A stretch of DNA of 64,000 nt from positions 3,472,001-3,536,000 of the forward strand of contig CDROCS010000253.1 in the NCBI GenBank assembly GCA_977020255.1, in the 5' to 3' direction. The stretch comes from Obrimoposthia wandeli (taxonomy: Eukaryota). Of the stretch, positions 36,393-56,201 are shown one piece after another. Every line of letters begins with the position of its first letter. Positions within the stretch are counted from its first letter, which is position 1. A program made the translations under genes and the position numbers. The notes below the pieces were generated by a model that was not told the origin of the DNA, searched no databases, and saw only the letters and a program-made list of their open reading frames with translations.

Positions 36393-36448
36393 TACGTTTC
36401 TTTCCATGGTTAAGTTTAAATTCGTATTTGTATTTGTATTTAACAATA

Positions 36449-36537
36449 AAATGCCACCTAAGTGGCTAAAACAGTTGGTTATAATAGTGAACAGAGAAAA
36501 GCCAACTATATCTTGTCCGTTTCAATGCATTGTATGG
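36449..36537 (-). repeat. Eroded attC site directly upstream of metY
   Basis: ATGCCACCTAAGTGGCTAAAACAGTTGGTTATAATAGTGAAC...AGCCAACT...TTGTCCGTTTCAA aligns with the array consensus; cores degenerate. Confidence 0.65.
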
Positions 36538-36751
36538 ATAATGATCCATCAATTAATAATTCTGTGTATCGAGCCCGAATAGCAAAGTAGAGTCACCTTA
36601 TTATGAATAACAAAAATAATCAAAATGAAATTAACGTTATCCGTAAAACACCTGCTTACGATGATAGGTAACTACTTCTGACATCGCTTGGTCCCCTTAA
36701 TTGTAGTGGTCAGGTAATACATTAACGCCATTGAGACGGTAATTATTGCCA

Positions 36752-37465
36752 TCATGTTGTAACCATGAAACCAAGCATGCCAAGAACAAATCCCATCACA
36801 GCCCCCATTGGAGGTCCCCAATGCTTTTCTAGCTTTACTTGAGGTGCCAAATCTTGAAATATAGAATAGAGAATACCACCCGATGCAAAAAGCATGATAG
36901 CCGCAATAACTTCGGGGGACTCTGATAACCATAAATAACCAGAGACTCCAGACATTGGGCCAAGTAAGGCCATTAACGTAAACATAATTATAATTTTTCT
37001 AGGTTTATAAGAAGACGTCGAGTTCAATTCTCGATAGGCGCTAAAGCCTTCAGGTAAGTTTTGTAACGCGATTAATGCGGCAAGTAAATATGCGCTACTA
37101 TTTCCCGTTGCAAATGCCGCTCCTAACGCGATTGATTCTGGAATAAAATCAGAGAGCATTGCTGCAAGTTGACTCGCCGGGGTATTTATTTTTTTAAGGT
37201 AGATATCAAGGAGCATAAAGCTAAGCCCCCCGACTATGAACCAAGCACAAGCAGAAATTGGATTAAGAGTAGCCATGCCTTCAGGTACCAAAACAAGAGC
37301 AACGGCTGACAATAGTGCCCCTCCTCCAAAAGCCATGACACTGTGCCTTAATTCTTCCCCAACACACACATCCTTAATATTTTCAAAGCGAGCAATTACC
37401 GCACCTAAAGGCATAGCTAAACCAGCGACTAAAGTAGAGACTATAACGGTTAGTAAAAGATACAT
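36752..37465 (-). CDS. ZIP family divalent metal transporter (cassette-like)
   Basis: AFGGGALLSAVALVLVPEG, DFIPESIALGA, ALQNLPEG, SGGILY; start placed at ATG 37465. Confidence 0.88.
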   Translation of the reverse strand: MYLLLTVIVSTLVAGLAMPLGAVIARFENIKDVCVGEELRHSVMAFGGGALLSAVALVLVPEGMATLNPISACAWFIVGGLSFMLLDIYLKKINTPASQLAAMLSDFIPESIALGAAFATGNSSAYLLAALIALQNLPEGFSAYRELNSTSSYKPRKIIIMFTLMALLGPMSGVSGYLWLSESPEVIAAIMLFASGGILYSIFQDLAPQVKLEKHWGPPMGAVMGFVLGMLGFMVTT

Positions 37466-37482
37466 GAATGAATCCGGGTTGA

Positions 37483-37577
37483 GGTAAACGCCCATTTAAG
37501 AAACTGATAATGGCTGGCTAAAATTAACGATAAACAAGCACGAACAACCGTTGCGTTTATCATTGAATTACTTATGT
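37483..37577 (-). repeat. Eroded attC site
   Basis: AAACGCCCATTTAAG..CTGATAATGGCTGGCTAAAAT...TTGAATTACTTATGT. Confidence 0.65.
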
Positions 37578-37693
37578 TTTCAGAAACTTAATATATATGC
37601 TGACCAATGTAAAGTGTTACCTAATAAACAACACTACTTGGGAGGAAAAACTCAAAGATACTATAAGTTTCTCCAATGGTAAGGAGTCTAGCT

Positions 37694-38299
37694 TTAATTA
37701 CTACTTACCTTTTTTAATTGGCGATTGTGAATTTTTGATAAGAGTAACAATGAAAAAATTGCACCTAATAACGCAAACCCCATATCTGATTGAGTATCCC
37801 AAACATATCCTTGTGTTCCCAAAAAGGCTTCTGCATCTTCGCCAGAAGTTAGCGCTACCCACCACTCAATTAATTCATAGAATGCACTGAAAGCTAAACA
37901 AATAGAAACAGTAATTATATTTCGCCAAAAATTGCCATTGACTACACTTTTACGAATTAAGATTTCTCTCATGAATAACGCAGGAACAAAGCCCTGGAAG
38001 AAATGGCCAACTTTGTCGTAATTATTTCTCTCTGCACCGAATAAACCATCAAAGAATGGCACTTCTGCGTAGGTATAATGACCGCCTATCATTAAAACAA
38101 TACAATGTAATAATATGAAGAAATAGAGCATTGAAGTCAGTCGAAATGCATTGTACGTTACCATTAAGAACGCACCGGTGATTAAAGCAGGAAAAACTTC
38201 TAGAAACCAAGTGAATTGATCTTTTGGGGTTATTCCCGACCAAATAAAAACAATTATAAATACAACTATCCATAGAGACTTGATTTTTAAATACTCCAA
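37694..38299 (-). CDS. DUF2238/YjdF family inner-membrane protein
   Basis: WFLEVFP, GGHYTYAEVP, RNNYDKVGHF, YELIEW, QGYVWDTQSDM. Confidence 0.9.
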   Translation of the reverse strand: MEYLKIKSLWIVVFIIVFIWSGITPKDQFTWFLEVFPALITGAFLMVTYNAFRLTSMLYFFILLHCIVLMIGGHYTYAEVPFFDGLFGAERNNYDKVGHFFQGFVPALFMREILIRKSVVNGNFWRNIITVSICLAFSAFYELIEWWVALTSGEDAEAFLGTQGYVWDTQSDMGFALLGAIFSLLLLSKIHNRQLKKVSSN

Positions 38300-38527
38300 A
38301 TAAATTTAAGATCAGCGTAAAACAACCCACTGTATTTTTCAGTTTAAAGAATAACTTGTGATAAATATTCTGTAACAGTTATATAACAATAAATTTTAAG
38401 CGTTATGTCTGTCCCGTATTTTCTTTTCTGTTATTATATAAAGAACAACACCTAAATCACATAAGTGATTGAAAAGGTGAAAATTAAAATAGTTTTTATT
38501 TATAATAAAAATGACTAGGAGAAGGTT

Positions 38528-38977
38528 TTGTCCAATATTAATTTCAGTGTTGTCGGTTATTCACAATCAGCAACCAGAATGTCCGTTAAAGCACGTGATT
38601 TTACCATGATAGTTGATGAGCCACCAGTATTAGGAGGACAAGATCAGGGACCCAACCCTGTTGAATATGTACTTAGCGCTATCGTCGGTTGCCTAAATGT
38701 AACTGGCTACATTGTGGCAAATGAAATGGGATTAACCATCAATAGTTTAAAAATAAAAGCAAACGGCGATATAAATCCTGAGATGCTATTTGGCAAAGCA
38801 AGCAAAGATCGAGCTGGCTACAAGGGAATATGTATCGATTTTTGTATCGATGCAGAAGCAGATCAAGCAACATTAGATAGCTGGCTAAGCCAAGTTAAGG
38901 CACGCTGCCCAGTATCAGACAACTTAGCAAATTCGACGCCAATTTCAATCGGCTTAAATGTTGTTGAGCCTGCCTAA
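38528..38977 (+). CDS. OsmC family protein
   Basis: DEPPVLGGQDQGPNPVE...GCL...RCPVSD; TTG start. Confidence 0.9.
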   Translation: MSNINFSVVGYSQSATRMSVKARDFTMIVDEPPVLGGQDQGPNPVEYVLSAIVGCLNVTGYIVANEMGLTINSLKIKANGDINPEMLFGKASKDRAGYKGICIDFCIDAEADQATLDSWLSQVKARCPVSDNLANSTPISIGLNVVEPA

Positions 38978-39080
38978 TGATACCATTTAAAAGAGCTAAG
39001 GTTTTTTCATAGCTCTCTTTATTTTTTGCGCACTAATGTAGCGTTAATTATCTAATGTCGTCGTCCCAGAAATACTCTAC

Positions 39081-39830
39081 CTACTTGTTTAATATTATCA
39101 TTTCTTTGGCAACAAGAGCCGCTGACGGTAAAAACATAGTTGAAACAATACGTTCATCAATAACTACCTCATATTTGTTATTTAAGGTTTGTTTATTTTG
39201 CGCCATAGCACCATTCTTATTCAACTGACTTTCAACATAAAAAGGTAATAAAGTACCTTGTTTTGCCCATGATTTTTCTTTTTCAGTCGAATCAGGAAAG
39301 CCAGCAATTTTTTTACCTTTAACTAAAAATTGGCCATTTGATAAAATTACATTAGCAAAGGCACCAGCTCCGTGTCCTCCTGATCCGACAACACCGCCAG
39401 AGTCATAAATTTTCGCAATAATTGACTGTAACTTTTTATTGTTGGCCACATCAAATAATGGGCCATAACCCCCTCCGATATACACGCCCCAATAATCATC
39501 TGTAATAACATGTTTGGGCTCTAAAGAGTTAATAGCCTTATCCAAAAAACCTTCATATTTAATGGTATAACTACTGATCCCCAATGGATCCATCATAAAT
39601 TGTACTTGCCCGCCTTTTGGAGAAACAAAATCAACATCATAACCATGACTTATAAAGATATGATAAGGAGGCGCTACTTCCCATAGGTTATTTCTCGCAT
39701 CATGCTTTTCAGGATCTCCCATATCAATCATGTTTGATGCAATAATTAATACTTTTTTTTCTGGAGCGGCAATTGAATTAAACGAAATGATTAATATTGT
39801 TACAAATACAATAGAGATTAAATACCTCAT
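39081..39830 (-). CDS. DJ-1/PfpI-like type 1 glutamine amidotransferase-fold protein, exported
   Basis: Signal peptide; EVAPPY, VDFVSPKGG, YIGGGYGPLFD, HGAGAF. Confidence 0.82.
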   Translation of the reverse strand: MRYLISIVFVTILIISFNSIAAPEKKVLIIASNMIDMGDPEKHDARNNLWEVAPPYHIFISHGYDVDFVSPKGGQVQFMMDPLGISSYTIKYEGFLDKAINSLEPKHVITDDYWGVYIGGGYGPLFDVANNKKLQSIIAKIYDSGGVVGSGGHGAGAFANVILSNGQFLVKGKKIAGFPDSTEKEKSWAKQGTLLPFYVESQLNKNGAMAQNKQTLNNKYEVVIDERIVSTMFLPSAALVAKEMIILNK

Positions 39831-39917
39831 TATTTGTCCTTACTAAATAATTAGATTTGTAGATTAGATGCAAGCATGTGATAAAAGGTTTAATTTGAGC
39901 CTGACAGATACTTAACG

Positions 39918-39947
39918 CTGCGTATTTCAGGATCACTGAGCGATTTA
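39918..39947 (+). repeat. Fragment of the 9584-9896 repeat
   Basis: CTGCGTATTTCAGGATCACTGAGCGATTTA nearly identical to 9604-9633. Confidence 0.65.
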
Positions 39948-40343
39948 TTAGCTACCTAATTCACCTAAGACTTTTATTGCTAATTCAGCCTTGTCTGTTT
40001 GAACGAATATATGATCGTGATAATAAGCCGCTATAACATTAGCGCTAATATTATTATCTGCCAGCTTACCAGAAACCGCAGCAGTTAAACCAACAGCATC
40101 AAGACTAGAATGTACGGTTAAGGTTATACCTCTATATACAGACTCAAATAGAAGTTTATTAGCGATAGCAATTTCTTTAGAAATGACTAAAGTTAAGCCC
40201 TCTGATTCACGAAAAGACGCTAACGGCAATAGCGTATTAAAATCAAGATATTCACCTTGAACTGAACAAAACACATACTCACCCGGTATTAATTTAGGTG
40301 ACATAGATGCTAGCAGTTTATTCAAATTTGTTTCCCCAACCAT
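39948..40343 (-). CDS. ACT-domain protein (DUF2241-like), cassette gene
   Basis: GETNLNKLL.SM.P, FRESEGLTLV, ITLTVHSSLDAVGLTAA, NVIAAYYHDHIFV. Confidence 0.9.
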   Translation of the reverse strand: MVGETNLNKLLASMSPKLIPGEYVFCSVQGEYLDFNTLLPLASFRESEGLTLVISKEIAIANKLLFESVYRGITLTVHSSLDAVGLTAAVSGKLADNNISANVIAAYYHDHIFVQTDKAELAIKVLGELGS

Positions 40344-40358
40344 TAAATTATCCTTTGT

Positions 40359-40447
40359 GGCTAACGCCTATTAATAGGCTAAATATATTGGCTATAATAA
40401 GTAACGAACGTCAGCCAATTATTATGTGCCCTTATTATTTTTATATA
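40359..40447 (-). repeat. Eroded attC site
   Basis: GGCTAACGCCTATTAATAGGCTAAATATATTGGCTATAAT...CAGCCAATTATT. Confidence 0.7.
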
Positions 40448-40521
40448 AAAGCAAAATAACAAAAACTAAAACCCATTTATATACGTATAGAGCTAAATAA
40501 CCAACGGAGATAGTAATTATA

Positions 40522-40701
40522 ATGTTTTCAATATTTAAGAAAAACCCAATAAAAAAACTAAACAAACGCTATGAAGCCAAACTTGAAAAAGCCATGTACG
40601 CACAAAGAAATGGAGATATAAAATCCTATTCGATGATTACTGCTGAAGCTGAAAAAATAGCGATTGAAATAGAAGAGTTAGAAAAATTAGAAAAAAAGTA
40701 A
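40522..40701 (+). CDS. Small protein, DUF6435-like (59 aa), inverted relative to the array
   Basis: Hand translation MFSIFKKNPIKKLNKRYEAKLEKAMYAQRNGDIKSYSMITAEAEKIAIEIEELEKLEKK; GGAG upstream. Confidence 0.8.
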   Translation: MFSIFKKNPIKKLNKRYEAKLEKAMYAQRNGDIKSYSMITAEAEKIAIEIEELEKLEKK

Positions 40702-40753
40702 CGCAAATCAACGACTTTAATTGACTTATAGTGTCAATTATCGCTTGTTAGCA
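40696..40753 (-). repeat. Internally deleted attC remnant
   Basis: ...TAACGC at left and ...CGCTTGTTAGCA at right, only ~58 bp apart. Confidence 0.45.
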
Positions 40754-40763
40754 GGTTACTACC

Positions 40764-40976
40764 CTATTCCTTTTCTAACTTAGGGACGCCAATATAATAT
40801 AAAACGACTAAAAAATTAAATACTGGAACTAAGCCTGTAATGATGGCTATTTTCCAATTCCTATTTTTACTTTTTGCTAACAAAAAACATAAAATAGATA
40901 GTGATAATAATTGGACAGGCCAAATGATTGACATTATGGATATTTCACTATTCTTTATCATTTCTAAAATATGCAA
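40764..40976 (-). CDS. Small two-TM membrane protein, cassette gene
   Basis: 70 aa, lies between two attC remnants, AGGAG upstream. Confidence 0.7.
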   Translation of the reverse strand: MHILEMIKNSEISIMSIIWPVQLLSLSILCFLLAKSKNRNWKIAIITGLVPVFNFLVVLYYIGVPKLEKE

Positions 40977-40994
40977 AACTTTCTCCTTTAGTAA

Positions 40995-41104
40995 ATCTAA
41001 CTAGCTCCGCGTTAAGCGGACTAAAATTGTGGGCTCTAATGTGAGAGAAGTGAAACAGCCAGCTGTTATTTTTACGTTTGAATGCCTTATACCTGCTGGT
41101 TATA
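40995..41104 (-). repeat. Eroded attC site
   Basis: CTAAC...GCGTTAAGCGGACTAAAATTGTGGGCT..AATGTGAG.GAAGTGAAACAGCCAGCTGTT. Confidence 0.75.
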
Positions 41105-41105
41105 A

Positions 41106-41366
41106 TTAATAATGATAGCGGCAGGATATAACTGTTATATGACTATCACTAACGGCATATACAAGACGATTAGACTCATCCACACGTCTTGACCAAAAAC
41201 CTGATAAATTCTCTTTTAAAGATTCAGGTTTTCCGATCCCCTCAACTGGAGACCGCTTAGTGTCGATAATTAATTTATTAATCCTTTTAAGCGTTTTTTT
41301 ATCTTGCCCCTGCCAATATACATAATCAGCCCATGCATCATCCGTCCACGCTAACAACCTAGTCAT
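41106..41366 (-). CDS. yoeB: Txe/YoeB family toxin
   Basis: WTDDAWADYVYWQ, GIGKPESLK.NLSGFWSRR.D..NRLVY, SCRYHY. Confidence 0.95.
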   Translation of the reverse strand: MTRLLAWTDDAWADYVYWQGQDKKTLKRINKLIIDTKRSPVEGIGKPESLKENLSGFWSRRVDESNRLVYAVSDSHITVISCRYHY

Positions 41367-41613
41367 TTAATATTTCTCGCTCAATCACTTGAGCTGATTT
41401 ATATTGTTCAATAGAGCGAGTTAAATGAACTACGTTAGCTGGTGACTTTAATAAGTGAACAGTTTCCATCAAGCTGTTGTAATGATCCATAGACATAACA
41501 ACAGCATCTTCAGAGTCTCTACGTGTAATTACAGTATAGTCTGCGTCGTTTACGACATTATCAAGTACAGATTTAAGCCCATTTCTTGCTTCAGTAAAAG
41601 ATACAATTCTCAT
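41359..41613 (-). CDS. yefM: YefM/Phd family antitoxin
   Basis: SFTEARNGLKSVLD, VITRR..E.AVVMS..HYNSLMETVHLL.SP.N; overlaps yoeB. Confidence 0.95.
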   Translation of the reverse strand: MRIVSFTEARNGLKSVLDNVVNDADYTVITRRDSEDAVVMSMDHYNSLMETVHLLKSPANVVHLTRSIEQYKSAQVIEREILND

Positions 41614-41632
41614 AGTATCCTCCTTTCATAGT

Positions 41633-41690
41633 TGTACAGGTAATAGGACAAGTCTAACTAAAAAGAATTACTTGTGCAAGATCATGTACA
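41633..41690. promoter_or_regulatory. Putative YefM-YoeB operator (TGTACA-type palindromes)
   Basis: TGTACA at 41633 and 41685; TGTGCA at 41673, 12 bp from 41685, matching the known YefM operator spacing. Confidence 0.55.
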
Positions 41691-41858
41691 AGTTCAATCG
41701 CACCCAGTAGATTTCTCCAATCGTAATAACCACTTTTAGAGAAACCGTTGCGACTGTTTTGATATGATGCCAACAACAAAACTCAGTTGAACAGCGTTAA
41801 CTTTACAGTCATTTGAATACTTCCAAGTTCGTCTTGAAAACCCTTGTTAGGTGAATTT

Positions 41859-42230
41859 TTAAAAACGTTTATCTATTGCTATTACTTGGAAGGCATCTTC
41901 GTAGTAGGTTTTAAATAAATAATCACATTTTAATATCTGAATTTGAACATCGTGCTCTTTAAGTATTGCAATTAAGTTATACATTAAAGTAATAAAAGTT
42001 TGAGCTGATACTTTAAACCACGATACAGCATCACTTGGCCAATTATTATTACTCCAAGGAGGACAAGGCAATTCATCATTAAATTGTTCAAAAATGCATT
42101 CAACCAACTCTTCTTCATAAGGTGCTAATAAATCATTGTTTTTTAGATATGCAGCTTCAGTTAAAGGGCCGTGCATATCTCTTGGGTTTTCATCATCTGC
42201 ACCAATAGCAAATCGTATATACATATTCAC
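41859..42230 (-). CDS. Hypothetical protein, cassette gene
   Basis: 123 aa ORF bounded by complementary cores GTTAGGT (41846-52) and ACCTAAC (42229-35). Confidence 0.8.
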   Translation of the reverse strand: MNMYIRFAIGADDENPRDMHGPLTEAAYLKNNDLLAPYEEELVECIFEQFNDELPCPPWSNNNWPSDAVSWFKVSAQTFITLMYNLIAILKEHDVQIQILKCDYLFKTYYEDAFQVIAIDKRF

Positions 42231-42235
42231 CTAAC

Positions 42236-42412
42236 GAGACTGTAGAATTTCTTTTTTAGAAAAATCAGCCTCAAAAATTATTAAAAATTAAGCCCCAAAA
42301 CGCGTTGCTACATGAAATCTGAGGCAATAGCCTACTAGAAAATGACTTTGATAGGCTCTCTGAACATAAATTCCATCCGTCATTTTCTACTTTGGATAAA
42401 TTCTACAGCTTC
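42236..42412. mobile_element. 177-bp MITE with IS1182-like ends
   Basis: TIR GAGACTGTAGAATTT / AAATTCTACAGCTTC (13/15); flanked by AAC at 42233-35 and 42413-15. Confidence 0.8.
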
Positions 42413-42415
42413 AAC

Positions 42416-44307
42416 GAGGCTGTAGAATTACTCGTTTTTATATTATTTTTAATCGTAATACTCTAACTGGATTATTTTCTGTTAACAATCAAAAACGTTT
42501 ACGCTTTTGGCGATTTTTATTTTGACATCGTTGACAGTTCAATAATGATTAGTTTTTTACTTGTTTTGTCTTTTGAGGTTACTTTAGTGGGGGGAAACAG
42601 GGGTTTTCCCTTAGTGCAGGTTGTTTCTTAACTTCTCTATATTATGAACTAAGCAATACATCTGCCACTGGGTATTCACTTTTTCTTGGCCACGCAAAGT
42701 GAATTTATTCATGCCTTTATTGACAGTGATGTTACCAAATACCGGCTCGATTGTGCCTAATCGCTTACTGTATTGTCGTCGTCCAGCGCTACTGTCTATT
42801 TTTATCTTCATTTTGTCAGTGTAACTGATGACATTATCTGAGCTGTCGTTAACAAACTGCACCTGACGCCCTGTTTTGGTCGGCGCTTTACGCATGCATT
42901 GTTGTCGCAGTGGGCAGACCTTACAGTCTTTTAAATAGCCGGTGAAACGGGTGTAACTTTTTCCAGCAACATTGATATGATTACTCTGTAGCCACATGTC
43001 CTTGCCCGCTGGGCAACGGCAGGTTTCAGTGTCTTTATCAAAGTAAAAATCATCACCACTAAATTGTTTAGGTTTACCTTTACTGCGCTTTAATCGCCGT
43101 TTTTCTTTTTCTGTTGCATAGGTTTCACTTATTTGAAACAGCGGGTTACGACTTCTAAAAGCATTATCAGCCATGTAACTATCAAGCCTGGTGCTTGCCA
43201 TATACGCTAGATTAACTTCACTATGAAAACCACTGTCGGCAGTAAACTTGGCTGTGGAAAAGGTATCGGGGGTGCCAAGATTATTGAGTTGTTGCTTGAG
43301 TTGCTCTACCGCTGGTTTTAATGTTTGTTGCTCTGAAACACTGCCCCATGTTTGCGCTTGTAAGATTATTTGATGTTTGTCGTCGTTAATCGCAATGCCA
43401 TTGTAACCTTGGATGGTGCCTTTACCGGTGGTCATTTTTGCGCTGTCAGGGTCGGTAATATTACTCTTAATTGGCTTGCCTTGGCTACCCAGCTTATCTT
43501 CATTGTTAGTGAGGAATTCTTTTATTTTTATCGCGCTATTATCGAGTTTGGTCTTTTGCTTTAGGTCATGTTCTATTTCATCTTCATTCAAGCCATCTTG
43601 GGCTTGATGCCTAGCTAAAATTCGTTGACTGGCTCGACGCAGTTTCGCTTCTTTACGAGTGAGCTCTTCAATGGTGCCGCTCCATTCTTTACTCGCGTTA
43701 GACTTGATTTTGCAGCCATCAATTGAAAACATTTGCCGACCAATCAAGCCTTCTTTATCACATATCATCAAGACTTGGGTGAACAGTGGCTCTATTTGGT
43801 CTTTCATACGGGCAACAAATGAGGCGATAGCCGTAAAATGGGGTTGTACGTCACCCGATAAACTCATGAAGGTAATGTTAGTTTCACAGGCATTCGCAAT
43901 ACGACGACTAGTGATATACCCGCGAGAGTAGGCAAATAATATGATTTTTAACATCACGGCTGGAGAATAGGCGGCTGCGCCGCCTTTGTCATTATTGAAC
44001 CACGCATCAAACCCTGACAAATCAAGGTGATTATCAATAATATGCGCGAGCGCATATTCAAACGTACCAGGAACAATTTGAACTGAAAAATCAACGGGAA
44101 TGAATTTACTTTGGCAGGATAAATCGGGTTTGTAGTTCGCCATGACAGGTTTACTGTTTTGGTTTCTAGAATAACCTATCTATTAGATCACAGACAAGAT
44201 CGGGATTCAAACCTAGCTTCCCAAACCAATCGACCTTTGATTAACAAAATATAAAAAAGCAAAAAGACATAATTTCAAACGTCTTTTGGAGAAATTTACG
44301 ATACCTC
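42416..44307 (-). mobile_element. IS1182-family insertion sequence (~1.9 kb)
   Basis: End GAGGCTGTAGAATT at 42416; degenerate opposite end ...AAATTTACGATACCTC at 44307; AAC on both sides; carries the transposase. Confidence 0.75.
42611..44143 (-). CDS. IS1182-family DDE transposase, apparently intact
   Basis: 510 aa; AYSPAVMLKIILFAYSRG..TSRRI..AC, SIDGCKIKSNAS, NITDPDS..M, TADSGF, C-terminal YSKRLGTIEPVFGNI. Confidence 0.9.
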   Translation of the reverse strand: MANYKPDLSCQSKFIPVDFSVQIVPGTFEYALAHIIDNHLDLSGFDAWFNNDKGGAAAYSPAVMLKIILFAYSRGYITSRRIANACETNITFMSLSGDVQPHFTAIASFVARMKDQIEPLFTQVLMICDKEGLIGRQMFSIDGCKIKSNASKEWSGTIEELTRKEAKLRRASQRILARHQAQDGLNEDEIEHDLKQKTKLDNSAIKIKEFLTNNEDKLGSQGKPIKSNITDPDSAKMTTGKGTIQGYNGIAINDDKHQIILQAQTWGSVSEQQTLKPAVEQLKQQLNNLGTPDTFSTAKFTADSGFHSEVNLAYMASTRLDSYMADNAFRSRNPLFQISETYATEKEKRRLKRSKGKPKQFSGDDFYFDKDTETCRCPAGKDMWLQSNHINVAGKSYTRFTGYLKDCKVCPLRQQCMRKAPTKTGRQVQFVNDSSDNVISYTDKMKIKIDSSAGRRQYSKRLGTIEPVFGNITVNKGMNKFTLRGQEKVNTQWQMYCLVHNIEKLRNNLH

Positions 44308-44437
44308 AACGCCTCCCATAAAATACCAACGCTGAGCAAGAAAGCAAAAAAATATGTTTGTTGCTAAAATGTTGAACGCCGGCGAAAACAACGAAAACAG
44401 CAAACTGTTTTTTTGTCCGTTTGAGCACTTGTTATAT
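44308..44437 (-). repeat. attC site interrupted at its crossover triplet by the IS and MITE
   Basis: AACGCC...GCTAAAATGT...CAGCAAACTGTTTTTTTGTCCGTTTGAGCACTTGTTATAT; carries ~20 extra nt near the left end. Confidence 0.75.
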
Positions 44438-45646
44438 TTATTCTTGTAACGCCAGCATGGTATGCTCAAAGCGAACACCTACTTTATGAAGTAAGGCATA
44501 AGCTTTCATAACTTTTTCTGTAGGAAAGACTCACCGTTGCACTTTTACCCCCAATGCTCATTCCGTTATAACTTTCACCTCAGAGCTAACTACTAGCGAA
44601 TACGCACTCAAGGGCTTATCCGTGACGGAATCCTCGTATTTCTAAGTCTGGAGGAAGCCGCTGCAAACTTGCGAAACTATGGCTCAAGTTTGGGTGGTTT
44701 GAACATCATATGAGGCGTAGACTAAAGTTTTTCCATTTCTTTTATTTGTTTTTCAGCCTTAATAACGAAACAAGTGATCTAATAGTCACCGTAATGATTT
44801 TTGCAGCTCCTAGTGCTTGAAAGAAAGTGCATGTCCTTTCTTCTTTTTATCTGGGAAAGATGAATTCAAAATTTGAGCTTGGATTTCGAGTATTCAGCAA
44901 CTTAACCTTCTTTTTATTAAGGCTTTCACTTTTTCGGTACAAATATTCTTGGCTTTTAAATTTTTCTCGGCTTAGTTCGAGCTGCTGACGAGCGATATCA
45001 TTACTTTTATCTGACATTTCGTTTGCTTGATAAGCTACGATGGTAGGTAATATCCTTGATTAAGCAGAAGATCAGCAAACGGCATAGTAAACTTGTTTAT
45101 AAAAAAACCAACCATTGCGGTAAAGCCCATGACTAATGGTTGGGAATGGTGAAGACCAGAACATTCTTTATACTTCTTCTAAAGAAGGAACATTTGGGCT
45201 GCATACACTCATTAAAGAACACTACATCCACATTGCCGGATCTGGTAATGATCATTTATTGGCGAGCTTATGTTTGTTTTTATTGAGGATCAACCCCAGC
45301 CTTTCATGAAAACCTTATCACTAAACAATGTTAACGGACCTCTCTTATCGAAAAATTTTTAGCTAGCGCTTGATATTACAGTCCAAAGCCAATAAAGGCA
45401 GTGTCAGGTATTGATGGAATGACGAATGGAGTGACTTTCCTGCAGAAGTCTAACAAGTGGAAAACATAAACTTTACAGCTTTACTCGCCAAGAACATACC
45501 TATTTGGGGCAACTCGTACTAATATTAGTGGCTGTCACTTGAGAATTCACACTATTAATAAAGTTAATAGCTTTAAACTCAAACCCACAATCTGGGTTTG
45601 TACATTTCACAGGAATATGATCTTGCTTTCGCATTGCTAATGCCAT
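44438..45646 (-). pseudogene. Degraded cassette gene (N-terminal Cys motif, probable TM, coiled coil)
   Basis: AAGAGGA plus ATG 45646: MALAMRKQDHIPVKCTNPDCG...SCPK-stop; later VAYQANEMSDKSNDIARQQLELSREK; many internal stops. Confidence 0.6.
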
Positions 45647-45692
45647 GAAATCCTCTTTCAATTAGTTGTGGCTGAGTAGAGATTATGTTGAG

Positions 45693-45789
45693 CTATAACG
45701 CCACGTTAAGCGGCAAAAAATTGTTGGCTAAAATGTGAACGGAGTGAAACAGCCAACTGTTTTTTGTCCGTTTGAACGTCTTGTTATGT
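45693..45789 (-). repeat. attC site
   Basis: CTATAACGCCACGTTAAGCGGC...GGCTAAAATGTG...CAGCCAACTG...CTTGTTATGT. Confidence 0.92.
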
Positions 45790-46066
45790 AATTGGTATTT
45801 AAGCGCTTTACACTAACAAAATACATTGAAAGTTAATAGATAAACGAGAGTGAATACAACACCACCGCCTAATAAACACCAAACCTTGCCTTTGAGCCAA
45901 CACAGATAACCGATTTAACGCGACACGAATAAACCCGATAAACAAAAACAAACTTCCTCGCGTCTTACTATTCAACAATACTTGGCGAAAACTCAAAGAT
46001 ACAAATACAACGCTAGTTTTAAGCCATTAACGTTTTACACGTATTTTACCTAGAAAATAAGGCGGT
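45790..46066 (-). other. Gene-less cassette
   Basis: Complementary cores GTTATGT/ACATAAC; no credible ORF; A/C-rich on the + strand. Confidence 0.75.
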
Positions 46067-46167
46067 ACATAACGCCCTGTTAAGGGGCTGATAATAGTTT
46101 GCTAAAATGTGTAGCGAAGCGAAACCGAGCAAACTGTTAGCAGTCCCGCTTGAAATTCTTGTTATGT
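46067..46167 (-). repeat. attC site
   Basis: ACATAAC...GTTATGT, 101 bp, internal inverted arms GTTTGCT/AGCAAAC. Confidence 0.95.
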
Positions 46168-46177
46168 GTATGAAAAC

Positions 46178-46564
46178 CTAACCTTTATTTAGGCCAAGAT
46201 CTATATGCGCGATAATATAACCATATTCCTTGTCACTTAGTTTATTGTTTTTATGTAATTCTTTAGCGTAATCAAAAGTCCAAGGGTTACCATTTGGAGA
46301 TAAAGGTATATTTAACTCATTTTTAGAAGGACTCATCGATAACTTTATGCCCTTTACAGCTTTTTTAGCACAATAACTTAAAATATACTCAACCGCATAT
46401 TTATCGACAGAAGGTGCCCAAGTGTATTCAGTTTCACATGCTGTTTTGTGCTCACCATCCGAAGTGATGTACTCAAGTTCCCCTTGAGTAGCGCACGAAA
46501 CCAAAACGAGCACTAGTGATAATGAAAATAACAGTCGCAATTTAATACCCACCTTCTGATACAC
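46178..46564 (-). CDS. Putative lipoprotein, cassette gene
   Basis: 128 aa, lipobox LVSC. Confidence 0.75.
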   Translation of the reverse strand: MYQKVGIKLRLLFSLSLVLVLVSCATQGELEYITSDGEHKTACETEYTWAPSVDKYAVEYILSYCAKKAVKGIKLSMSPSKNELNIPLSPNGNPWTFDYAKELHKNNKLSDKEYGYIIAHIDLGLNKG

Positions 46565-46662
46565 ATAACGCCCTGTTAAGGGGCAAATTGTAGTTGGCTA
46601 AAATGTGAAGCGGAGCGGAAAAAGCCAACTGTTATTTGTCCCGCTTGAACAGCTTGTTAGTT
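46563..46662 (-). repeat. attC site
   Basis: ACATAACGCCCTGTTAAGGGGC...GTTAGTT, 100 bp. Confidence 0.95.
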
Positions 46663-47334
46663 TTACATTGCAAATACACTGTTTATGCTTTGCCCTTGCT
46701 TCAATTTTTCTAAGTTTTCATAGAGCTGAGACTTATTAACACCGCTCGCTAGAACCTTTGCGGCTTGATAATGCTTAAGCGTAAAATTAAAAGTTTGATT
46801 TTTTATCGAATTGACTTCTTCTGGAGGTAAATCTATATTTTCTAATAAGTAAGGTTTTCTAAAATCAACCTGCGTACCTATTCCTTCGTTAAACCAAATT
46901 GGTAAATTTATAAATTTTAACCAACCAACCCTAAAGTGAACTTCTGCATGCATAAATTCATGTGCAATGACATCAACATTTTGCCCTTCAGGTCCTAGAA
47001 CGATACACTCACCCAATGGGGAGTAAAGCATTCTTCCCCATTCGTTTGAACCTAAATCAGATGCTTCTACTTTATTTGTAGCGATAACTACTTTTGGGTT
47101 AGATTCCATTTTACCAAAAGTATCGTCAATTCTAGATTTTCCTTGCTTAATTTTAGAAAGTAGCTCTCCTTTTTTATCAAGGCTAAAAGAGGTACTTGCA
47201 AAAATATTTGGAGCAATTTCTGAATAACTTGAATACCCAATAAATTCACACCCTAATGTGTGCCTCTCAGTGTAAACACCTATAACAAAAATCAAACCAA
47301 TAATTGAGAATAAAGATAACCATAATTTTGTCAC
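46663..47334 (-). CDS. Membrane-anchored/exported protein with HExxH zinc-metallopeptidase motif, cassette gene
   Basis: N-terminal TM; IAHEFMHAEVH...PIWFNEGIG. Confidence 0.78.
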   Translation of the reverse strand: MTKLWLSLFSIIGLIFVIGVYTERHTLGCEFIGYSSYSEIAPNIFASTSFSLDKKGELLSKIKQGKSRIDDTFGKMESNPKVVIATNKVEASDLGSNEWGRMLYSPLGECIVLGPEGQNVDVIAHEFMHAEVHFRVGWLKFINLPIWFNEGIGTQVDFRKPYLLENIDLPPEEVNSIKNQTFNFTLKHYQAAKVLASGVNKSQLYENLEKLKQGQSINSVFAM

Positions 47335-47349
47335 AAAACCTCCTTGTAA

Positions 47350-47451
47350 AACTAACGCCCGTATTAACAGGCAAACAAATAGCGGGTTAAAATAGTGAAC
47401 GCAGTGAACAAAACCCGCTGTTTTTTGTCCTAGTTAAATCGCTTGTTATAC
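47350..47451 (-). repeat. attC site
   Basis: AACTAAC...GTTATAC; inner arms AGCGGGTT/AACCCGCT. Confidence 0.93.
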
Positions 47452-47693
47452 GGTAAGGGGAACAAACCTCGCCAAACACTCGACGTTCAACATGCTGATT
47501 ATAGGCAGAAATTCACAAATAAATCAAAGTACTCAAACAACTCGCTCAAAGAGCGCTTTAAAAAGAGAAGTATACGCCAAGCCTTCGGTTAGATTTTGTG
47601 GATATTAAAACGCCAAGCTTATGCTGTAGAAAGCCGGACTTTACCCGCCTTTCATACAGCCACCTTCTCAAAGGACTCTTCACTTGTCTTGCC
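47452..47693 (-). other. Gene-less cassette
   Basis: Complementary cores GTTATAC/GTATAAC; no ORF of 60 aa or more. Confidence 0.75.
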
Positions 47694-47796
47694 GTATAAC
47701 GCCCAAATAACAGGCTAAGTAATGGTTGGCTAAAATTGTGTAGCGAAGCGAAACGTAGCCAACTGTTACGTGTCCTTGTTGATTTTCTTGTTAGCT
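47694..47796 (-). repeat. attC site
   Basis: GTATAACGCC...GTTAGCT. Confidence 0.95.
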
Positions 47797-47797
47797 T

Positions 47798-48385
47798 TTA
47801 AATTGAACTAATACAACACCTTTTAAACTTTTTACCACTATTACAATTACACAATTCATTTCTACCTTGTTTCTTTTTTGTGACATAAGGTAGTCTTTGA
47901 AAATTAGTCTGTGGTTGTATGGCTTTTTGGATAGCATTTTGAATCATTTCATCCACTTCTGATTCTGATAAAGAATCATTATTTGATGATGTAATCATCA
48001 AACCAATTGCCATTAGGATTATGGTAATGAAAGCATAAAGCTCTATTCTGGTTTTAGGTAGAATTGCAGCAAATGAACTTAACTCTGGTGTCTCTTTTTG
48101 AATTTGTTCGTTTACTTCTTCTCGAGTTTGATTGTTCTTTTGTGCATTAGTTAATATCGCAGATAGAACTTTCAACTGTTCTACAGTCTTTAAGGTACCT
48201 GAAATTAATTTAATCGCATTCCCTGTTATGTCATAGACGCCATCAGGTACACTGCCTGTAGCTCCACAATTAGGGCAAGGTCCAACCTTATTCCCGCTAA
48301 GGGTGACATTAGTACAGTTTTCAAAAACAAATCCTGACCCAAATATAGCGCCACAATTATCACAAAAGGCTGGCATTTCTGGCAC
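47798..48385 (-). CDS. Zinc-ribbon / TM / SEC-C motif protein, cassette gene
   Basis: CDNC...CPNC, central hydrophobic helix, GRNELCNCNSGKKFKRCC. Confidence 0.85.
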   Translation of the reverse strand: MPEMPAFCDNCGAIFGSGFVFENCTNVTLSGNKVGPCPNCGATGSVPDGVYDITGNAIKLISGTLKTVEQLKVLSAILTNAQKNNQTREEVNEQIQKETPELSSFAAILPKTRIELYAFITIILMAIGLMITSSNNDSLSESEVDEMIQNAIQKAIQPQTNFQRLPYVTKKKQGRNELCNCNSGKKFKRCCISSI

Positions 48386-48400
48386 GGTACTCTCCTTAAA

Positions 48401-48496
48401 AGCTAACGCCTAAATAACAGGCTAAAAATAGTGGGCTAAAATGGAGCGAAGCGAACAGCCCGCTGTTTTTAGTCCTTGTTGATTTTCTTGTTATAT
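48401..48496 (-). repeat. attC site
   Basis: AGCTAACGCC...GTTATAT. Confidence 0.95.
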
Positions 48497-49488
48497 TGGT
48501 CCTGCGACATTCAGAAATGCCTCACCAACTTCTTTTACGTAATTATCTATTATTTTCATAAAGACCACTGAGTCTTTATAATCCAAACCACTATTTTCAT
48601 CTTCGATATATGCACCCAGAAATATAGTAGTTATTTGAGCCAAACTAATTGCAGTAAAATGAGCAGGCTCCGTTAGCCCTGAGTTTGATTGGCCACAAAG
48701 TAACATATCTTGTTTTGCCTCATTCATTGCATACAATGAAGCCATTTCAAAATAATCAGAATGTATATTACGATTAGCTAATTTTATAATTATGTGACCA
48801 CTTCTCAAGTCCTACGTACTCGCTCAACTTGCCTATTTGTGCAAATTTCGTGTGCTTACGTGCCCAATTCCAATGAGACTCTCCATTGGTAATTTCTTTT
48901 TTTAAATTGGAATAATATTCAGATTCTTCATCCGTAAAAGTTTCCTGTCCCATTGCTTCCGCTGTTTTTCGGTGCTCTTCAATACCTTCCGCTGTGTGAA
49001 CAACTCCCTGTTTAATGTAATCAATTGCAGCATCTTTTCCATGTTTCTTTATAACCAGACAAGTAACTACCATTTCATACAATGTACGCCAACGAGCCAG
49101 TGCAGCATCAGTGTCCCTCCTTCAAGGAGGTGAATTATTTCATTCGAAATAGCTGACATGCATGCGCATGTTGACGAAGAAAAACACCAATTAACTCATC
49201 AGTTTCATATTTAGGGATTTTCAAAAATTGCTCTTGAAAATTCATTCCTGCTTGTAAGCACGTTTCTCTTAAAGCATGAAGTTTACGAAAGCCAACAGAC
49301 CATTTTTCTCTGTTTCTTTTTATAAAAGCATCATGTTCAGAAACAACACTTTTGACTCTTATTTCTTCTTGATCTTTAGTATCTTCGATTAATATATCGG
49401 ATGCTAAATTTATGATGGACTCGTAACTTGGATTTTCTCCATTTTCACGAAGCTTAGCTTCAGCTAGATCTAAAAATTCTTCGAACAC
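48491..49488 (-). pseudogene. Frameshifted single cassette gene, DUF5677/HEPN-like
   Basis: Three overlapping ORF pieces within one cassette; the junction reads IIHLLEGG/TDAALARWRTLYE, later LANRNIHS. Confidence 0.65.
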
Positions 49489-49512
49489 TTATAACTCCAA
49501 AGTTTGAGACCA

Positions 49513-49612
49513 ATATAACGCCCTATTAAGGGGCAAATTGTAGTTGGCTAAAATGTGTAGCGAAGCGGAACTAGCCAACTGTTATTTGTCCCGCTTGAAT
49601 AGCTTGTTAGCA
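49513..49612 (-). repeat. attC site
   Basis: ATATAACGCCCTATTAAGGGGC...GTTAGCA; nearly identical to 46563-46662. Confidence 0.95.
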
Positions 49613-55203: not shown

Positions 55204-55219
55204 TTGTATGGGTGTACAG
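55204..55219. promoter_or_regulatory. Degenerate LexA (SOS) box upstream of intI
   Basis: TTGT-ATGGGTGT-ACAG versus consensus CTGT-N8-ACAG, 16 bp before the ATG. Confidence 0.5.
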
Positions 55220-55235
55220 TTACCTTGAGGTTTTT

Positions 55236-56201
55236 ATGTCTTCTCCTTTTTTGCAGCACATTACGGAACAAATGCGTTTAAAACGTTATGCTAAAAGAAC
55301 GATAGAAAGCTATGTCTATTGGATAAAGGCGTTTATAAACTTTAATGGCCAGCGTCACCCAATAAAATGTCATGATGTGGAAGTTGAAAATTTTCTTTCT
55401 CATTTAACAAACAAACTTAATGTCGCACCTAGAACCCAAGGTGTGGCACTAAATGCTCTAGTCTTCTTGTATAGAGGGATTTTATTAAAACCTTTAACCC
55501 TTGAGCTCAATTTTAATAAATCTAAGCAGGCTACTAAGTTACCTGTCGTGTTAACCCAAGAAGAGGTTATTGCGTTATTAGCTAAAATATCAAATAACTA
55601 TAGTTTGCCTTGTAAGTTAATGTACGGTAGCGGGTTACGTTTAATGGAGGTTGTTCGCTTAAGAGTACAGGACATTGATTTTGATTTTCATGCTATTCAA
55701 GTATGGCAAGGAAAAGGCGGTAAAAATCGGCGTGTTACGTTAGCAAAAGAATTGTGTGATACCTTGAAAGCTCAAATAGCGTTAGCACAGTATTATTATG
55801 AACAAGATCAGAGTAATCCTAACTATAAAGGTGTATGGCTACCTTATGCTTTAGCAAGAAAGTACCCCAATGCGAGCAAAGATATTCTGTGGCATTATCT
55901 TTTCCCTTCTAGCCGTTTAAGTGAAGATCCCGAAACAGGTTTTTTTCGTCGGCATCATATTAATGAAACAACATTAAGAAAAGCAGTGAAAATGGCTGCA
56001 TGCAATGCAGAGATAGAAAAAAATGTGACTTGTCATACGTTACGGCATTCATTTGCCACGCATTTATTGCAACGAGGGGCCGATATAAGAACCGTGCAGG
56101 AGCAATTAGGTCATACCGATATTCGTACTACGCAAATATACACTCATGTCATCGAACAGGGTGCGAATGGTGTTCGCAGCCCATTATCAGATTTACTCTA
56201 A
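55236..56201 (+). CDS. intI: Integron integrase (tyrosine recombinase), intact
   Basis: YGSGLRLME, GKGGKNR, integron-specific insert GVWLPYALARKYPNA...WHYLFPS...RRHH, HTLRHSFATHLL, LGHTDIRTTQIYTHV; GAGG then ATG 55236. Confidence 0.98.
   Translation: MSSPFLQHITEQMRLKRYAKRTIESYVYWIKAFINFNGQRHPIKCHDVEVENFLSHLTNKLNVAPRTQGVALNALVFLYRGILLKPLTLELNFNKSKQATKLPVVLTQEEVIALLAKISNNYSLPCKLMYGSGLRLMEVVRLRVQDIDFDFHAIQVWQGKGGKNRRVTLAKELCDTLKAQIALAQYYYEQDQSNPNYKGVWLPYALARKYPNASKDILWHYLFPSSRLSEDPETGFFRRHHINETTLRKAVKMAACNAEIEKNVTCHTLRHSFATHLLQRGADIRTVQEQLGHTDIRTTQIYTHVIEQGANGVRSPLSDLL

What the first reader, a model, noticed from the sequence alone, without database searches (positions are those of the whole stretch)
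42229..44437. IS1182-family element and a related MITE stacked at the attC crossover triplet
Seen on the + strand: ACCT-AAC-[177-bp MITE, 42236-42412]-AAC-[IS, 42416-44307]-AAC-GCC...attC body. ACCTAAC is the exact complement of the core at the other end of the neighbouring cassette (GTTAGGT, 41846), so the original site was ACCTAAC|GCC. Two insertions apparently hit the same point, each duplicating AAC (GTT on the coding strand), the invariant triplet IntI recombines. MITE and IS ends are related (GAG.CTGTAGAATT) and the transposase is intact. Known: attC-targeting is described for IS1111-attC elements and group IIC-attC introns; I am not aware of it for IS1182-family DDE elements, but could not search. 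Inference: an attC-homing IS/MITE pair. Because GTT is regenerated, the attC may stay usable, and IntI excision of the downstream cassette would carry the IS and MITE as cargo. Caveats: the 44307 end is degenerate (GAGGTATCGTAAATTT), a second AAC at ~44328 could be the attC edge, and this is a single locus.
Basis: partly seen in the sequence, partly recalled or inferred. Interest (0 to 1): 0.85.

Follow-up and report, generated by a model that had tools for sequence, protein, structure and literature searches.

The report
Insertion sequence that homes to integron attC sites
A jumping gene of the IS1182 family and its miniature derivative sit exactly at the three bases where an integron cuts and joins its gene cassettes, and dozens of relatives in other marine bacteria sit at the same spot, which points to a so far undescribed class of integron-targeting transposon.

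Summary
On the + strand the layout is ACCT-AAC-[177-bp MITE 42236-42412]-AAC-[1892-bp IS 42416-44307]-AAC-GCC. It lies in a cassette array whose intI is at 55212-56201.

The interpretation, attC homing by an IS1182-family DDE element and its MITE, is strongly supported by other genomes.
- In 78 genome loci from at least 10 genera, 64 of 69 IRL-side ends follow GTT and 64 of 68 IRR-side ends precede GTT.
- For 48 of 60 usable IRL ends, an attC covariance model built only from free attCs of this window places its GTT exactly against the IS. None lies in the inverse orientation.
- Sixteen metagenomic copies of the MITE family behave the same (16/16 and 15/15).
- A paralogous empty site has a single GTT, so GTT is a 3-bp duplication.
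- Copies 99.8-100% identical sit at different attCs of one genome.
- Relatives down to 37% identity also sit at attC. A 42% clade uses the R'' AAC. Relatives at 30-33% do not target attC.

Not supported for this locus: its IRL core is destroyed, the adjacent attC is aberrant, and the cassette's own attC is a remnant, so IntI "cargo" mobility here is doubtful.

No paper found describes this; ISfinder could not be checked. Other first-stage notes of this scan on this genome report IS1182 copies at attC cores.

The parts
55212..56201 (+). integron integrase gene intI; the cassettes run away from it on the minus strand
   Evidence: TIGR02249 integron integrase, 469.9 bits against a cutoff of 265
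44322..44437 (-). aberrant attC upstream of the IS. The R''-L'' half is conserved and the L'-R' half has diverged. The model places R' GTT at 44330-44328.
   Evidence: Covariance model R1, 28.7 bits; nhmmer matches only model positions 4-75; no attC fold
44311..44327 (-). 17 nt between the modelled R' and the IS. The last ~14 nt (TTATGGGAGGC before GTT) resemble the 3' end of an attC and may be a remnant of a second attC.
   Evidence: Comparison with the target profile GCC..TTA....GGCGTT; sequence
44308..44310 (-). GTT copy 1 (AAC on the + strand), abutting IRL
42416..44307 (-). IS1182-family insertion sequence, 1892 bp, 92.8% identical in DNA to the copy in L002
44288..44307 (-). IRL, degenerate: GAGG-TATCGTA-AATTTCTCC where relatives have GAGG-CTGTAG-AATTTCTCC
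   Evidence: Alignment with 32 relatives and with L002
42611..44143 (-). transposase gene, 510 aa, DDE type, uninterrupted
   Evidence: Pfam DDE_Tnp_1_6 and DUF772; NF033551 267.6 bits; 100% coverage by homologues; D142, D303 and E466 invariant
42416..42437 (-). IRR, canonical (AAACGAGTAATTCTACAGCCTC on the minus strand)
42413..42415 (-). GTT copy 2, between IS and MITE
42236..42412 (-). 177-bp MITE with the same terminal inverted repeats. It belongs to a family also found in L013 (85% identity), L017 (83%) and 16 metagenome contigs.
42229..42235 (-). GTTAGGT: GTT copy 3 plus RRRY, the 5' boundary of the downstream cassette. It is complementary to that cassette's own R'' box.
41859..42230 (-). 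cassette ORF (121-123 aa, no family match)
41813..41852 (-). remnant (R'' ACCTAAC plus the start of L'') of the cassette's own attC; the rest has decayed
   Evidence: Model R1 gives only 6.6 bits and there is no hairpin

Best explanation
The 1892-bp element is a member of a deep, unnamed clade of the IS1182 family of DDE transposons. This clade, and the non-autonomous MITEs that share its terminal inverted repeats, transposes specifically into integron attC sites. Insertion takes place at the R' core, at the GTT triplet where IntI exchanges strands. The triplet ends up on both sides as a 3-bp target duplication. The element is always oriented with IRL against the attC body and the transposase gene in the direction of the cassettes. 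The attC body plus a GTT stays together upstream, and the next cassette keeps its GTTRRRY. The attC-proximal junction is again 'attC body + GTT', so a second element can land there, which would explain the IS-GTT-MITE stacks. Shown: the site, the orientation, the duplication, recent mobility and the phylogenetic breadth. Inferred: that the transposase itself selects the site, whether by the conserved GGCGTTA sequence or by the stem next to it, in line with the hairpin targeting known for IS1272 in the same family. The copy in this window is an old one. It has lost the core of its IRL and lies in a decaying distal part of the array, so it is probably immobile in cis, although its ORF is intact.
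For: Family: Pfam DDE_Tnp_1_6, DUF772 and DDE_Tnp_1; NF033551 IS1182 at 267.6 bits; invariant D142/D303/E466.
Site: 64 of 69 IRL-side ends follow GTT and 64 of 68 IRR-side ends precede GTT. There are 62 distinct left and 58 distinct right flanks. Their profile is indistinguishable from the 3' ends of 84 free attCs.
Independent attC test: model R1 was built from 9 free attCs of the window. It gives full-length matches whose GTT abuts IRL in 48 of 60 usable ends. With nhmmer, 43 of 66 ends are at offset 0, none is shifted and none is in inverse orientation.
Duplication: L016 carries the same cassette with one GTT, while L030 in the same genome carries the IS with GTT on both sides.
Mobility: copies 99.8-100% identical sit at different attCs in Pseudocolwellia HL-MZ7 and Psychromonas KJ10-10.
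MITEs: at least four families share only the IRs. In 16 metagenome copies of the 177-bp family, 16/16 left flanks end in attC plus GTT and 15/15 right flanks start with GTT.
Breadth: L079 Pseudoalteromonas, L080 at 49% identity, L044 at 50% (GTT on both sides, but its flank did not fold as an attC) and L074 Desulfamplus MAG at 37% with a textbook attC fold.
Family precedent: IS1272 and 'some IS1182 members' target hairpins or palindromes (PMC4923244, PMC5678879).
Against: No transposition assay exists, so the role of the transposase in choosing the site is inferred. The geometry (GTT on both sides, exact crossover point, fixed orientation) is also what an IntI-catalysed insertion of a circle would leave. 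In this window the adjacent attC is aberrant and the model places its R' 20 nt away, so this locus alone would not prove the rule. NF033551 falls just below NCBI's cutoff (267.6 against 270). Named IS1182 members are only 23-26% identical. Twelve of 60 ends have no attC match with my model, although most of these still have a GGCGTT-type flank.
Confidence: 0.85

Rival explanations
1. The elements are placed by the integron integrase, not by their transposase. The transposase makes a circle with the junction IRR-GTT-IRL. IntI then recombines the GTTGAGG of that junction, acting like a simple or secondary site, with a folded attC. This drops the circle into a cassette slot, so the two GTTs are cassette boundaries and not a target duplication.
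For: The result looks exactly like a cassette slot: G|TT on both sides, insertion at the IntI crossover, one orientation, even for MITEs whose IR tips are symmetric. Only the 3-nt spacer of a circle junction would be asymmetric, which would explain the polarity. GTT plus GAGG approximates GTTRRRY.
Against: A homologous clade at 42% identity (L083, L084) is flanked AAC|IS|AAC at the R'' box, which by established integron knowledge IntI does not cleave. The IS 3' region gives no attC match. Many copies lie in attC clusters with no intI within 4 kb; only L023 has one. The elements have all the hallmarks of DDE transposons, and their family is known to target hairpins.
Confidence: 0.07
2. There is no targeting. 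The IS inserts broadly, and only insertions at cassette boundaries survive because they are harmless.
For: Cassette arrays tolerate insertions, and ISs in general accumulate in integrons (PMC4889954).
Against: Survival bias cannot produce single-base precision, one orientation and invariant GTT flanks at about 75 sites, including nearly identical recent copies. No copy was seen elsewhere in intergenic or cassette DNA.
Confidence: 0.02
3. In this window the IS did not enter the attC at 44322-44437 but the 5' untranslated region of the next cassette, 20 nt past the real R' (GTTGGTA at 44330-44324). The AAC flanks are then a coincidence of a short preferred motif.
For: Model R1 aligns R' to 44330-44328.
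Against: GTTAGGT after the MITE is the exact complement of the cassette's own R'' ACCTAAC, which marks the true cassette boundary. The 14 nt before the IS fit the attC 3'-end profile. Every relative abuts an attC 3' end. The simplest history is an insertion at a real attC whose 5' part was later rearranged.
Confidence: 0.06

Closest known systems
IS1111-attC group (ISPa21, ISPst6, ISKpn4; IS110/IS1111 family)
   Same: Insertion sequences that specifically invade attC sites of integron cassettes at a fixed position and in a fixed orientation (PMC3001079, PMC11187229).
   Different: Those elements use a DEDD transposase guided by a seekRNA. They have subterminal repeats, insert near the 5' end of the attC and lie antisense to the cassettes. 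This element has a DDE transposase and terminal IRs, makes a 3-bp duplication, inserts at the 3' R' GTT and lies in the sense direction. It also has derived MITEs.
Group IIC-attC introns (for example S.ma.I2)
   Same: A monophyletic lineage of a wider mobile-element family that has specialised on attC.
   Different: Those are retroelements that insert into the bottom strand, antisense to the cassettes. This element has no reverse transcriptase or ribozyme.
IS1272 / TnSha1 (IS1182 family, staphylococci)
   Same: Same IS family. They choose hairpin-forming inverted repeats as targets.
   Different: IS1272 shows no sequence specificity, inserts in both orientations, deletes part or all of the hairpin and leaves no duplication. 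This element uses one precise base position, keeps the hairpin, duplicates GTT and has one orientation. Only about 23-26% identity to named IS1182 members was measured here.
IS1397 / ISKpn1 (IS3 family) in REP/BIME palindromes
   Same: From my own knowledge, not tested here: DDE insertion sequences that are specific for a class of repeated chromosomal hairpins.
   Different: Different IS family, different target (REP loops) and no link to a recombination system.
Integron gene cassette
   Same: The element occupies a slot bounded by G|TT on both sides, in the sense orientation, and would be carried along if IntI excised the following cassette.
   Different: It has no attC of its own (no R1 match in its 3' region). 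It has terminal inverted repeats and a transposase.

Membership tests
IS1182 family (ISfinder) | DDE transposase with an N-terminal DUF772 and a C-terminal DDE_Tnp_1_6 domain | tested here: met
   PF05598 at 2.8e-14 and PF13751 at 1.1e-30; invariant D142, D303 and E466
IS1182 family (ISfinder) | Match to the NCBIfam IS1182 transposase model above its cutoff | tested here: inconclusive
   NF033551 at 267.6 bits against a cutoff of 270. The next best model, IS5, reaches only 36.6 bits.
IS1182 family (ISfinder) | Length of about 1.3-1.95 kb with terminal inverted repeats (range from my own knowledge) | tested here: met
   1892 bp here; relatives are 1794-1913 bp with IRs of 14-20 bp. The IRL of the window copy is degenerate.
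IS1182 family (ISfinder) | Full-length similarity to named members (ISBce1, ISPa22, ISBf3, ISPpu20) | tested here: met
   tblastn gives 23-26% identity over 96-99% of the query, E 1e-22 to 1e-31. This is a distant branch.
IS1111-attC group | DEDD (IS110-type) transposase | tested here: not met
   Only DDE_Tnp_1, DDE_Tnp_1_6 and DUF772 domains were found
IS1111-attC group | Insertion near the 5' end of the attC, antisense to the cassettes | tested here: not met
   Insertion is at the 3' R' GTT, in the sense direction
Group IIC-attC intron | Reverse transcriptase ORF and group II ribozyme | tested here: not met
   The single ORF is a DDE transposase
Integron gene cassette | Own attC at the 3' end | tested here: not met
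   No R1 match lies inside any IS or MITE in 530 kb searched. The model is specific to this attC type, so the test is partial.
MITE (for 42236-42412) | Short, non-coding, with terminal IRs shared with an autonomous IS, the same target duplication and multiple copies | tested here: met
   177 bp with the same IRs and GTT flanks; 2 genome copies and 16 metagenome copies of the family
attC-homing element (functional class) | Independent copies abut bona fide attC sites at one position | tested here: met
   48 of 60 ends with a covariance-model attC in exact register; none shifted or inverted

The most novel reading that the evidence does not exclude
A deep clade of IS1182-family DDE transposons, with several MITE families, has made the integron crossover triplet its obligatory target. 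Subclades specialise on the R' GTT or on the R'' AAC. These would be a third, mechanistically different class of attC-homing elements. They leave the attC intact, sit like pseudo-cassettes, could ride with cassettes moved by IntI, and by recombination between copies could scatter attC clusters around chromosomes.
Probability: 0.6. Interest if true: 0.8.

Novelty: new variant of a known kind. Interest (0 to 1): 0.78.

Why it matters
Only two kinds of mobile element are known to home to attC sites: IS1111-attC elements and group IIC-attC introns. Both insert antisense, near the 5' end. A DDE transposon that hits the very triplet used by IntI, in the sense direction and without destroying the attC, differs in three ways.

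- It gives a natural case of base-precise, orientation-specific targeting by a classical DDE transposase. This makes the unresolved question of how IS1182-family enzymes read hairpins directly testable.
- It adds a new factor in the evolution of chromosomal integrons: polarity on downstream cassettes, homologous recombination between copies, and dispersal of attC clusters.
- It explains many 'transposase cassettes' and short repeats that annotation pipelines meet in marine integrons. Their ends can also serve as markers of attC boundaries.

Tried and rejected
- **Alternative IS end near 44283.** A weak inverted repeat (I6) and a degenerate IR-like stretch suggested it. I rejected it after aligning 32 relatives, which places the end at 44307.
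- **Reads and contigs from public runs.** They gave no empty site. They showed only that other copies in the source genome have a canonical IRL and lack the small 5'UTR insertions.
- **Exact look-up of the cassette protein** returned nothing. The 24-mer of the hypothetical empty site of this window also gave no match in metagenomes.
- **Consensus fold of the hairpin inside IRL** gave no structure, because the stems are out of register in the alignment. The hairpins are visible only sequence by sequence.
- **Promoter and terminator scan** found nothing above the shuffled expectation.
- **The idea that the IS is itself a cassette with its own attC** was rejected, since there is no attC match in its 3' region.
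- **Survival bias instead of targeting** was rejected on the precision of the flanks.
Full report
**1. What is in the window**

On the + strand it reads as follows:
- ACCTAAC at 42229-42235;
- a 177-bp element at 42236-42412 with inverted ends (GAGACTGTAGAATT ... AATTCTACAGCTTC);
- AAC at 42413-42415;
- a 1892-bp element from 42416 (GAGGCTGTAGAATT) to 44307;
- AAC at 44308-44310, then GCCTCCC.

The three canonical IR-like ends are the only ones in the 64 kb; the degenerate end at 44307 does not match that pattern.

The large element carries one uninterrupted ORF on the minus strand (42611-44143, 510 aa).
- Pfam finds DDE_Tnp_1_6, DUF772 and DDE_Tnp_1.
- Its best NCBIfam match is the IS1182 transposase model, 267.6 bits against a cutoff of 270. 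The next model, IS5, reaches 36.6 bits.
- Named IS1182 members (ISBce1, ISPa22, ISBf3, ISPpu20) are only 23-26% identical over the full length. This is therefore a distant branch of that family.
- D142, D303 and E466 are invariant across relatives down to 27% identity, and so is a cluster of four cysteines.

The context is a chromosomal integron. The gene intI is at 55212-56201 on the + strand (TIGR02249, 469.9 bits). The cassettes run on the minus strand, separated by about 100-nt attC sites of one sequence type. A typical attC folds as expected, with R''/R' and L''/L' paired.

**2. Where the true ends and the true site are**

A weak internal inverted repeat suggested another IS end near 44283. 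An alignment of the region upstream of the transposase start in 32 related loci rules this out. The window's GAGGTATCGTAAATTTCTCC is in register with the relatives' GAGGCTGTAGAATTTCTCC, so 44307 is the end. The conserved core CTGTAG is replaced by TATCGTA.

Compared with its closest relative (L002, 92.8% DNA identity), the first ~165 nt also carry several small insertions. The ORF and the other end are well kept. Contigs of the probable source strain show that other copies in that genome have the canonical end and lack these insertions. This copy is therefore old and probably cannot move by itself.

**3. The test of the interpretation: other copies**

A protein-guided scan of one genome per species returned 78 loci. 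They come from Colwellia, Psychromonas, Thalassotalea, Pseudocolwellia, Cognaticolwellia, Psychrobium, Psychrosphaera, Marinomonas, Pseudoalteromonas and Alteromonas, plus a few distant hits.

Listing every IR-like end with its flank gave a uniform picture. The left end is preceded by ...GCC..TTA....GGCGTT and the right end is followed by GTTA(G/T)....
- 64 of 69 left-type ends follow GTT, and 64 of 68 right-type ends precede GTT. The exceptions are one-base variants (ATT, GCT) or chance matches to the pattern.
- There are 62 distinct left flanks and 58 distinct right flanks.
- Their base profile is the same as the 3' end and downstream bases of 84 unoccupied attCs in the same loci.

To avoid judging attC-likeness by eye, I built a covariance model from nine attCs of this window that have no IS next to them. 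I searched all loci with it.
- Matching its coordinates to those, 48 of the 60 usable left ends have a full-length attC match ending exactly 5 nt inside the IS. Usable ends exclude three with too little flank, four stacked on another element and two chance matches.
- The model's R' GTT is therefore the GTT that touches the IS. These matches score up to 95 bits, like free attCs.
- A sequence-only HMM gave 43 of 66 ends at offset 0. None was shifted, and no right-type end lay next to an inverted attC.
- Most of the 12 ends without a match still have a GGCGTT-type flank, in attCs of other sequence types.

**4. Duplication and mobility**

In Pseudocolwellia sp. HL-MZ7 the same cassette occurs twice. 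In L016 it follows an attC with a single GTT. In L030 the IS lies between attC-GTT and GTT-cassette. The triplet is thus duplicated on insertion.

Flanks with T or A before the GTT (L041, L020, L017, L067, L072) show that the repeat is 3 bp and not 4 bp.

The three copies in that genome are 99.8-100% identical and lie at 0.94, 1.42 and 1.62 Mb. The three in Psychromonas sp. KJ10-10 are 99.8-99.9% identical. All have different flanks on both sides. This is recent transposition, each time into an attC, and not duplication of cassettes.

Only one locus (L023) has an intI within 4 kb. Most copies lie in attC clusters away from an integrase.

**5. The MITE**

Short elements with the same ends occur in at least four unrelated internal-sequence families of 127-128, 146, 176 and 177 bp.
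- The window's MITE belongs to the 177-bp family, with copies in a Cognaticolwellia MAG (85% identity) and a Pseudoalteromonas (83%).
- An internal 21-base pattern of this family found 16 metagenome contigs. In 16 of 16 the left flank is an attC 3' end plus GTT. In 15 of 15 the right flank starts with GTT. All have the same polarity. Two of the contigs are the same site.
- The IS-GTT-MITE stack recurs in L014, L021 and L022, always with the IS next to the attC. Four cases are too few to establish an order of insertion.

**6. How far the habit reaches**

Attribution of the habit by identity to the window's transposase:
- **71%:** a Pseudoalteromonas piscicida chromid copy at attC GTT.
- **50% (L044):** GTT on both sides and an attC-3'-end-like flank, although the flank did not fold as an attC (z +0.38).
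- **49% (L080):** an insertion behind an acetyltransferase cassette.
- **37% (L074, a Desulfamplus MAG):** the flank is a textbook attC hairpin, z = -3.1.
- **42% (L083, L084):** flanked AAC|IS|AAC at the R'' box, with the attC body on the other side (L084 fold z = -4.7) and the transposase again in the cassette direction. This is the mirror-image site.
- **39% (L081):** AAC flanks in an ambiguous context.
- **30-33% (L085, L087):** 4-bp TCAT/ATGA flanks and no attC.

attC homing therefore appears to be a derived trait of one deep clade of the family.

**7. Mechanism**

The best-supported reading is transposase-directed insertion into double-stranded attC DNA, with cuts staggered by 3 bp around GTT. 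The basis is:
- terminal IRs as the only feature shared by IS and MITEs;
- an intact DDE triad;
- recent copies at different attCs;
- the family's known preference for hairpins. IS1272 and TnSha1 insert into stem-loops, and a review cited in both papers notes that some IS1182 members target palindromes.

Unlike IS1272, this clade keeps the hairpin, duplicates 3 bp and has one orientation.

Whether the enzyme reads the sequence GGCGTTA or the stem next to it cannot be decided from sequence. Occupied and free attCs have the same profile.

The main rival is that IntI places a transposase-made circle into a cassette slot, which would give the same junctions and polarity. I rate it low for three reasons. 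The R'' clade cannot be explained that way. No attC-like site lies inside the elements. Most copies are far from any intI.

**8. What does not hold for this locus**

The attC next to the IS scores 28.7 bits, against 70-113 for its neighbours. Its best alignment puts R' at 44330-44328 (GTTGGTA), 20 nt from the IS. The strand does not fold as an attC.

The last ~14 nt before the IS do fit the attC 3'-end profile. GTTAGGT after the MITE is the exact complement of the cassette's own R'' ACCTAAC. The IS/MITE pair therefore sits at a true cassette boundary, probably next to the remnant of an attC whose 5' part was lost or rearranged.

The cassette's own attC is also reduced to R'' plus the start of L''. 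IntI-mediated movement of 'IS + MITE + ORF' is therefore unlikely here. It remains a reasonable, untested inference for loci with intact attCs.

**9. Novelty**

Eight full-text searches and nine papers read gave no report of IS1182-family elements, or any DDE insertion sequence, homing to attC.

The known attC invaders are IS1111-attC elements and group IIC-attC introns. Both lie near the 5' end of the attC and antisense to the cassettes (PMC3001079). IS1111-attC elements are RNA-guided (PMC11187229). A Shewanella integron survey explicitly found no IS interrupting attC sites (PMC9229058).

I could not consult ISfinder or TnPedia, and Tetu and Holmes 2008 is not held, so an existing database remark cannot be excluded.

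Other first-stage notes of this scan on other windows of the same genome mention IS1182 copies, remnants and MITEs at attC cores, and a separate IS91-plus-recombinase element at attC boxes. I did not test those.

**10. Verdict**

The core interpretation is supported far beyond this single locus. The side inference about IntI cargo is not supported here. I class it as a new variant of known kinds (attC-homing elements; hairpin-targeting IS1182 members) and as of high interest to integron and transposon specialists.

Noticed in passing
L002-L066, first ~45 nt inside IRL (alignments); window 44262-44288: Directly inside IRL every copy has an A-run, a short stem-loop and a T-run (for example AAAAAGAGCG...CGCTCTTTTTT, AAAAGGAAC...GTTCCTTTT). 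The stem sequence differs between lineages while the pairing is kept. This looks like a terminator that would shield the transposase gene from read-through from upstream cassettes and make the insertion polar.
   Followed up: partly
L083:121-1896 and L084:72-1847: A related IS (42% identity) is flanked AAC|IS|AAC at the R'' box of a different attC type. This is the mirror image of the R' GTT site, with the transposase still in the cassette direction.
   Followed up: partly
L085 and L087: Relatives at 30-33% identity with similar IR tips (GAGACTGTCG, GAGGCTGTTG) have 4-bp TCAT/ATGA flanks and no attC next to them. This marks the probable ancestral behaviour outside the attC-homing clade.
   Followed up: partly
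window 36400-45000: The part of the array far from intI holds decayed attCs: 44322-44437 at 28.7 bits, 41813-41852 a remnant only, 40357-40449 at 43.5 bits and 36444-36538 at 36.9 bits. The attCs at 45691-49612 score 92-113 bits.
   Followed up: partly
L007, L008, L029, L076 (Psychromonas sp. KJ10-10); L023, L033, L039, L054, L071 (KJ10-2); L015, L016, L030 (Pseudocolwellia HL-MZ7): Complete genomes carry several attC clusters megabases apart, each with a copy of this IS. Only L023 has an intI nearby (62.6% identical to the window's IntI), and there the IS follows the first cassette. The IS copies may help scatter attC clusters.
   Followed up: no
L004:~3560-3640: One copy has a 12-nt unit (TTGTTTGTGATC) repeated five times in the 5' untranslated region of the transposase gene.
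   Followed up: no
window 42611-44143 (protein residues 377-416): Four cysteines (C377, C407, C410, C416) are invariant from 78% down to 27% identity. They lie between the second D and the E of the catalytic triad and may form a zinc-binding insertion domain that could take part in target reading.
   Followed up: no
same genome, other windows (notes s1-229446, s1-224204, s1-198696): Earlier first-stage notes describe an IS91-like element (HUH/Y2 transposase plus tyrosine recombinase) that also ends at attC GTTA boxes. If real, this genome hosts two unrelated attC-homing elements.
   Followed up: no
window 41843-41878 and 42203-42238: A 36-nt inverted repeat, 78% complementary, brackets the small cassette ORF. 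It includes the R'' and R' cores and extends into both ends of the cassette.
   Followed up: no
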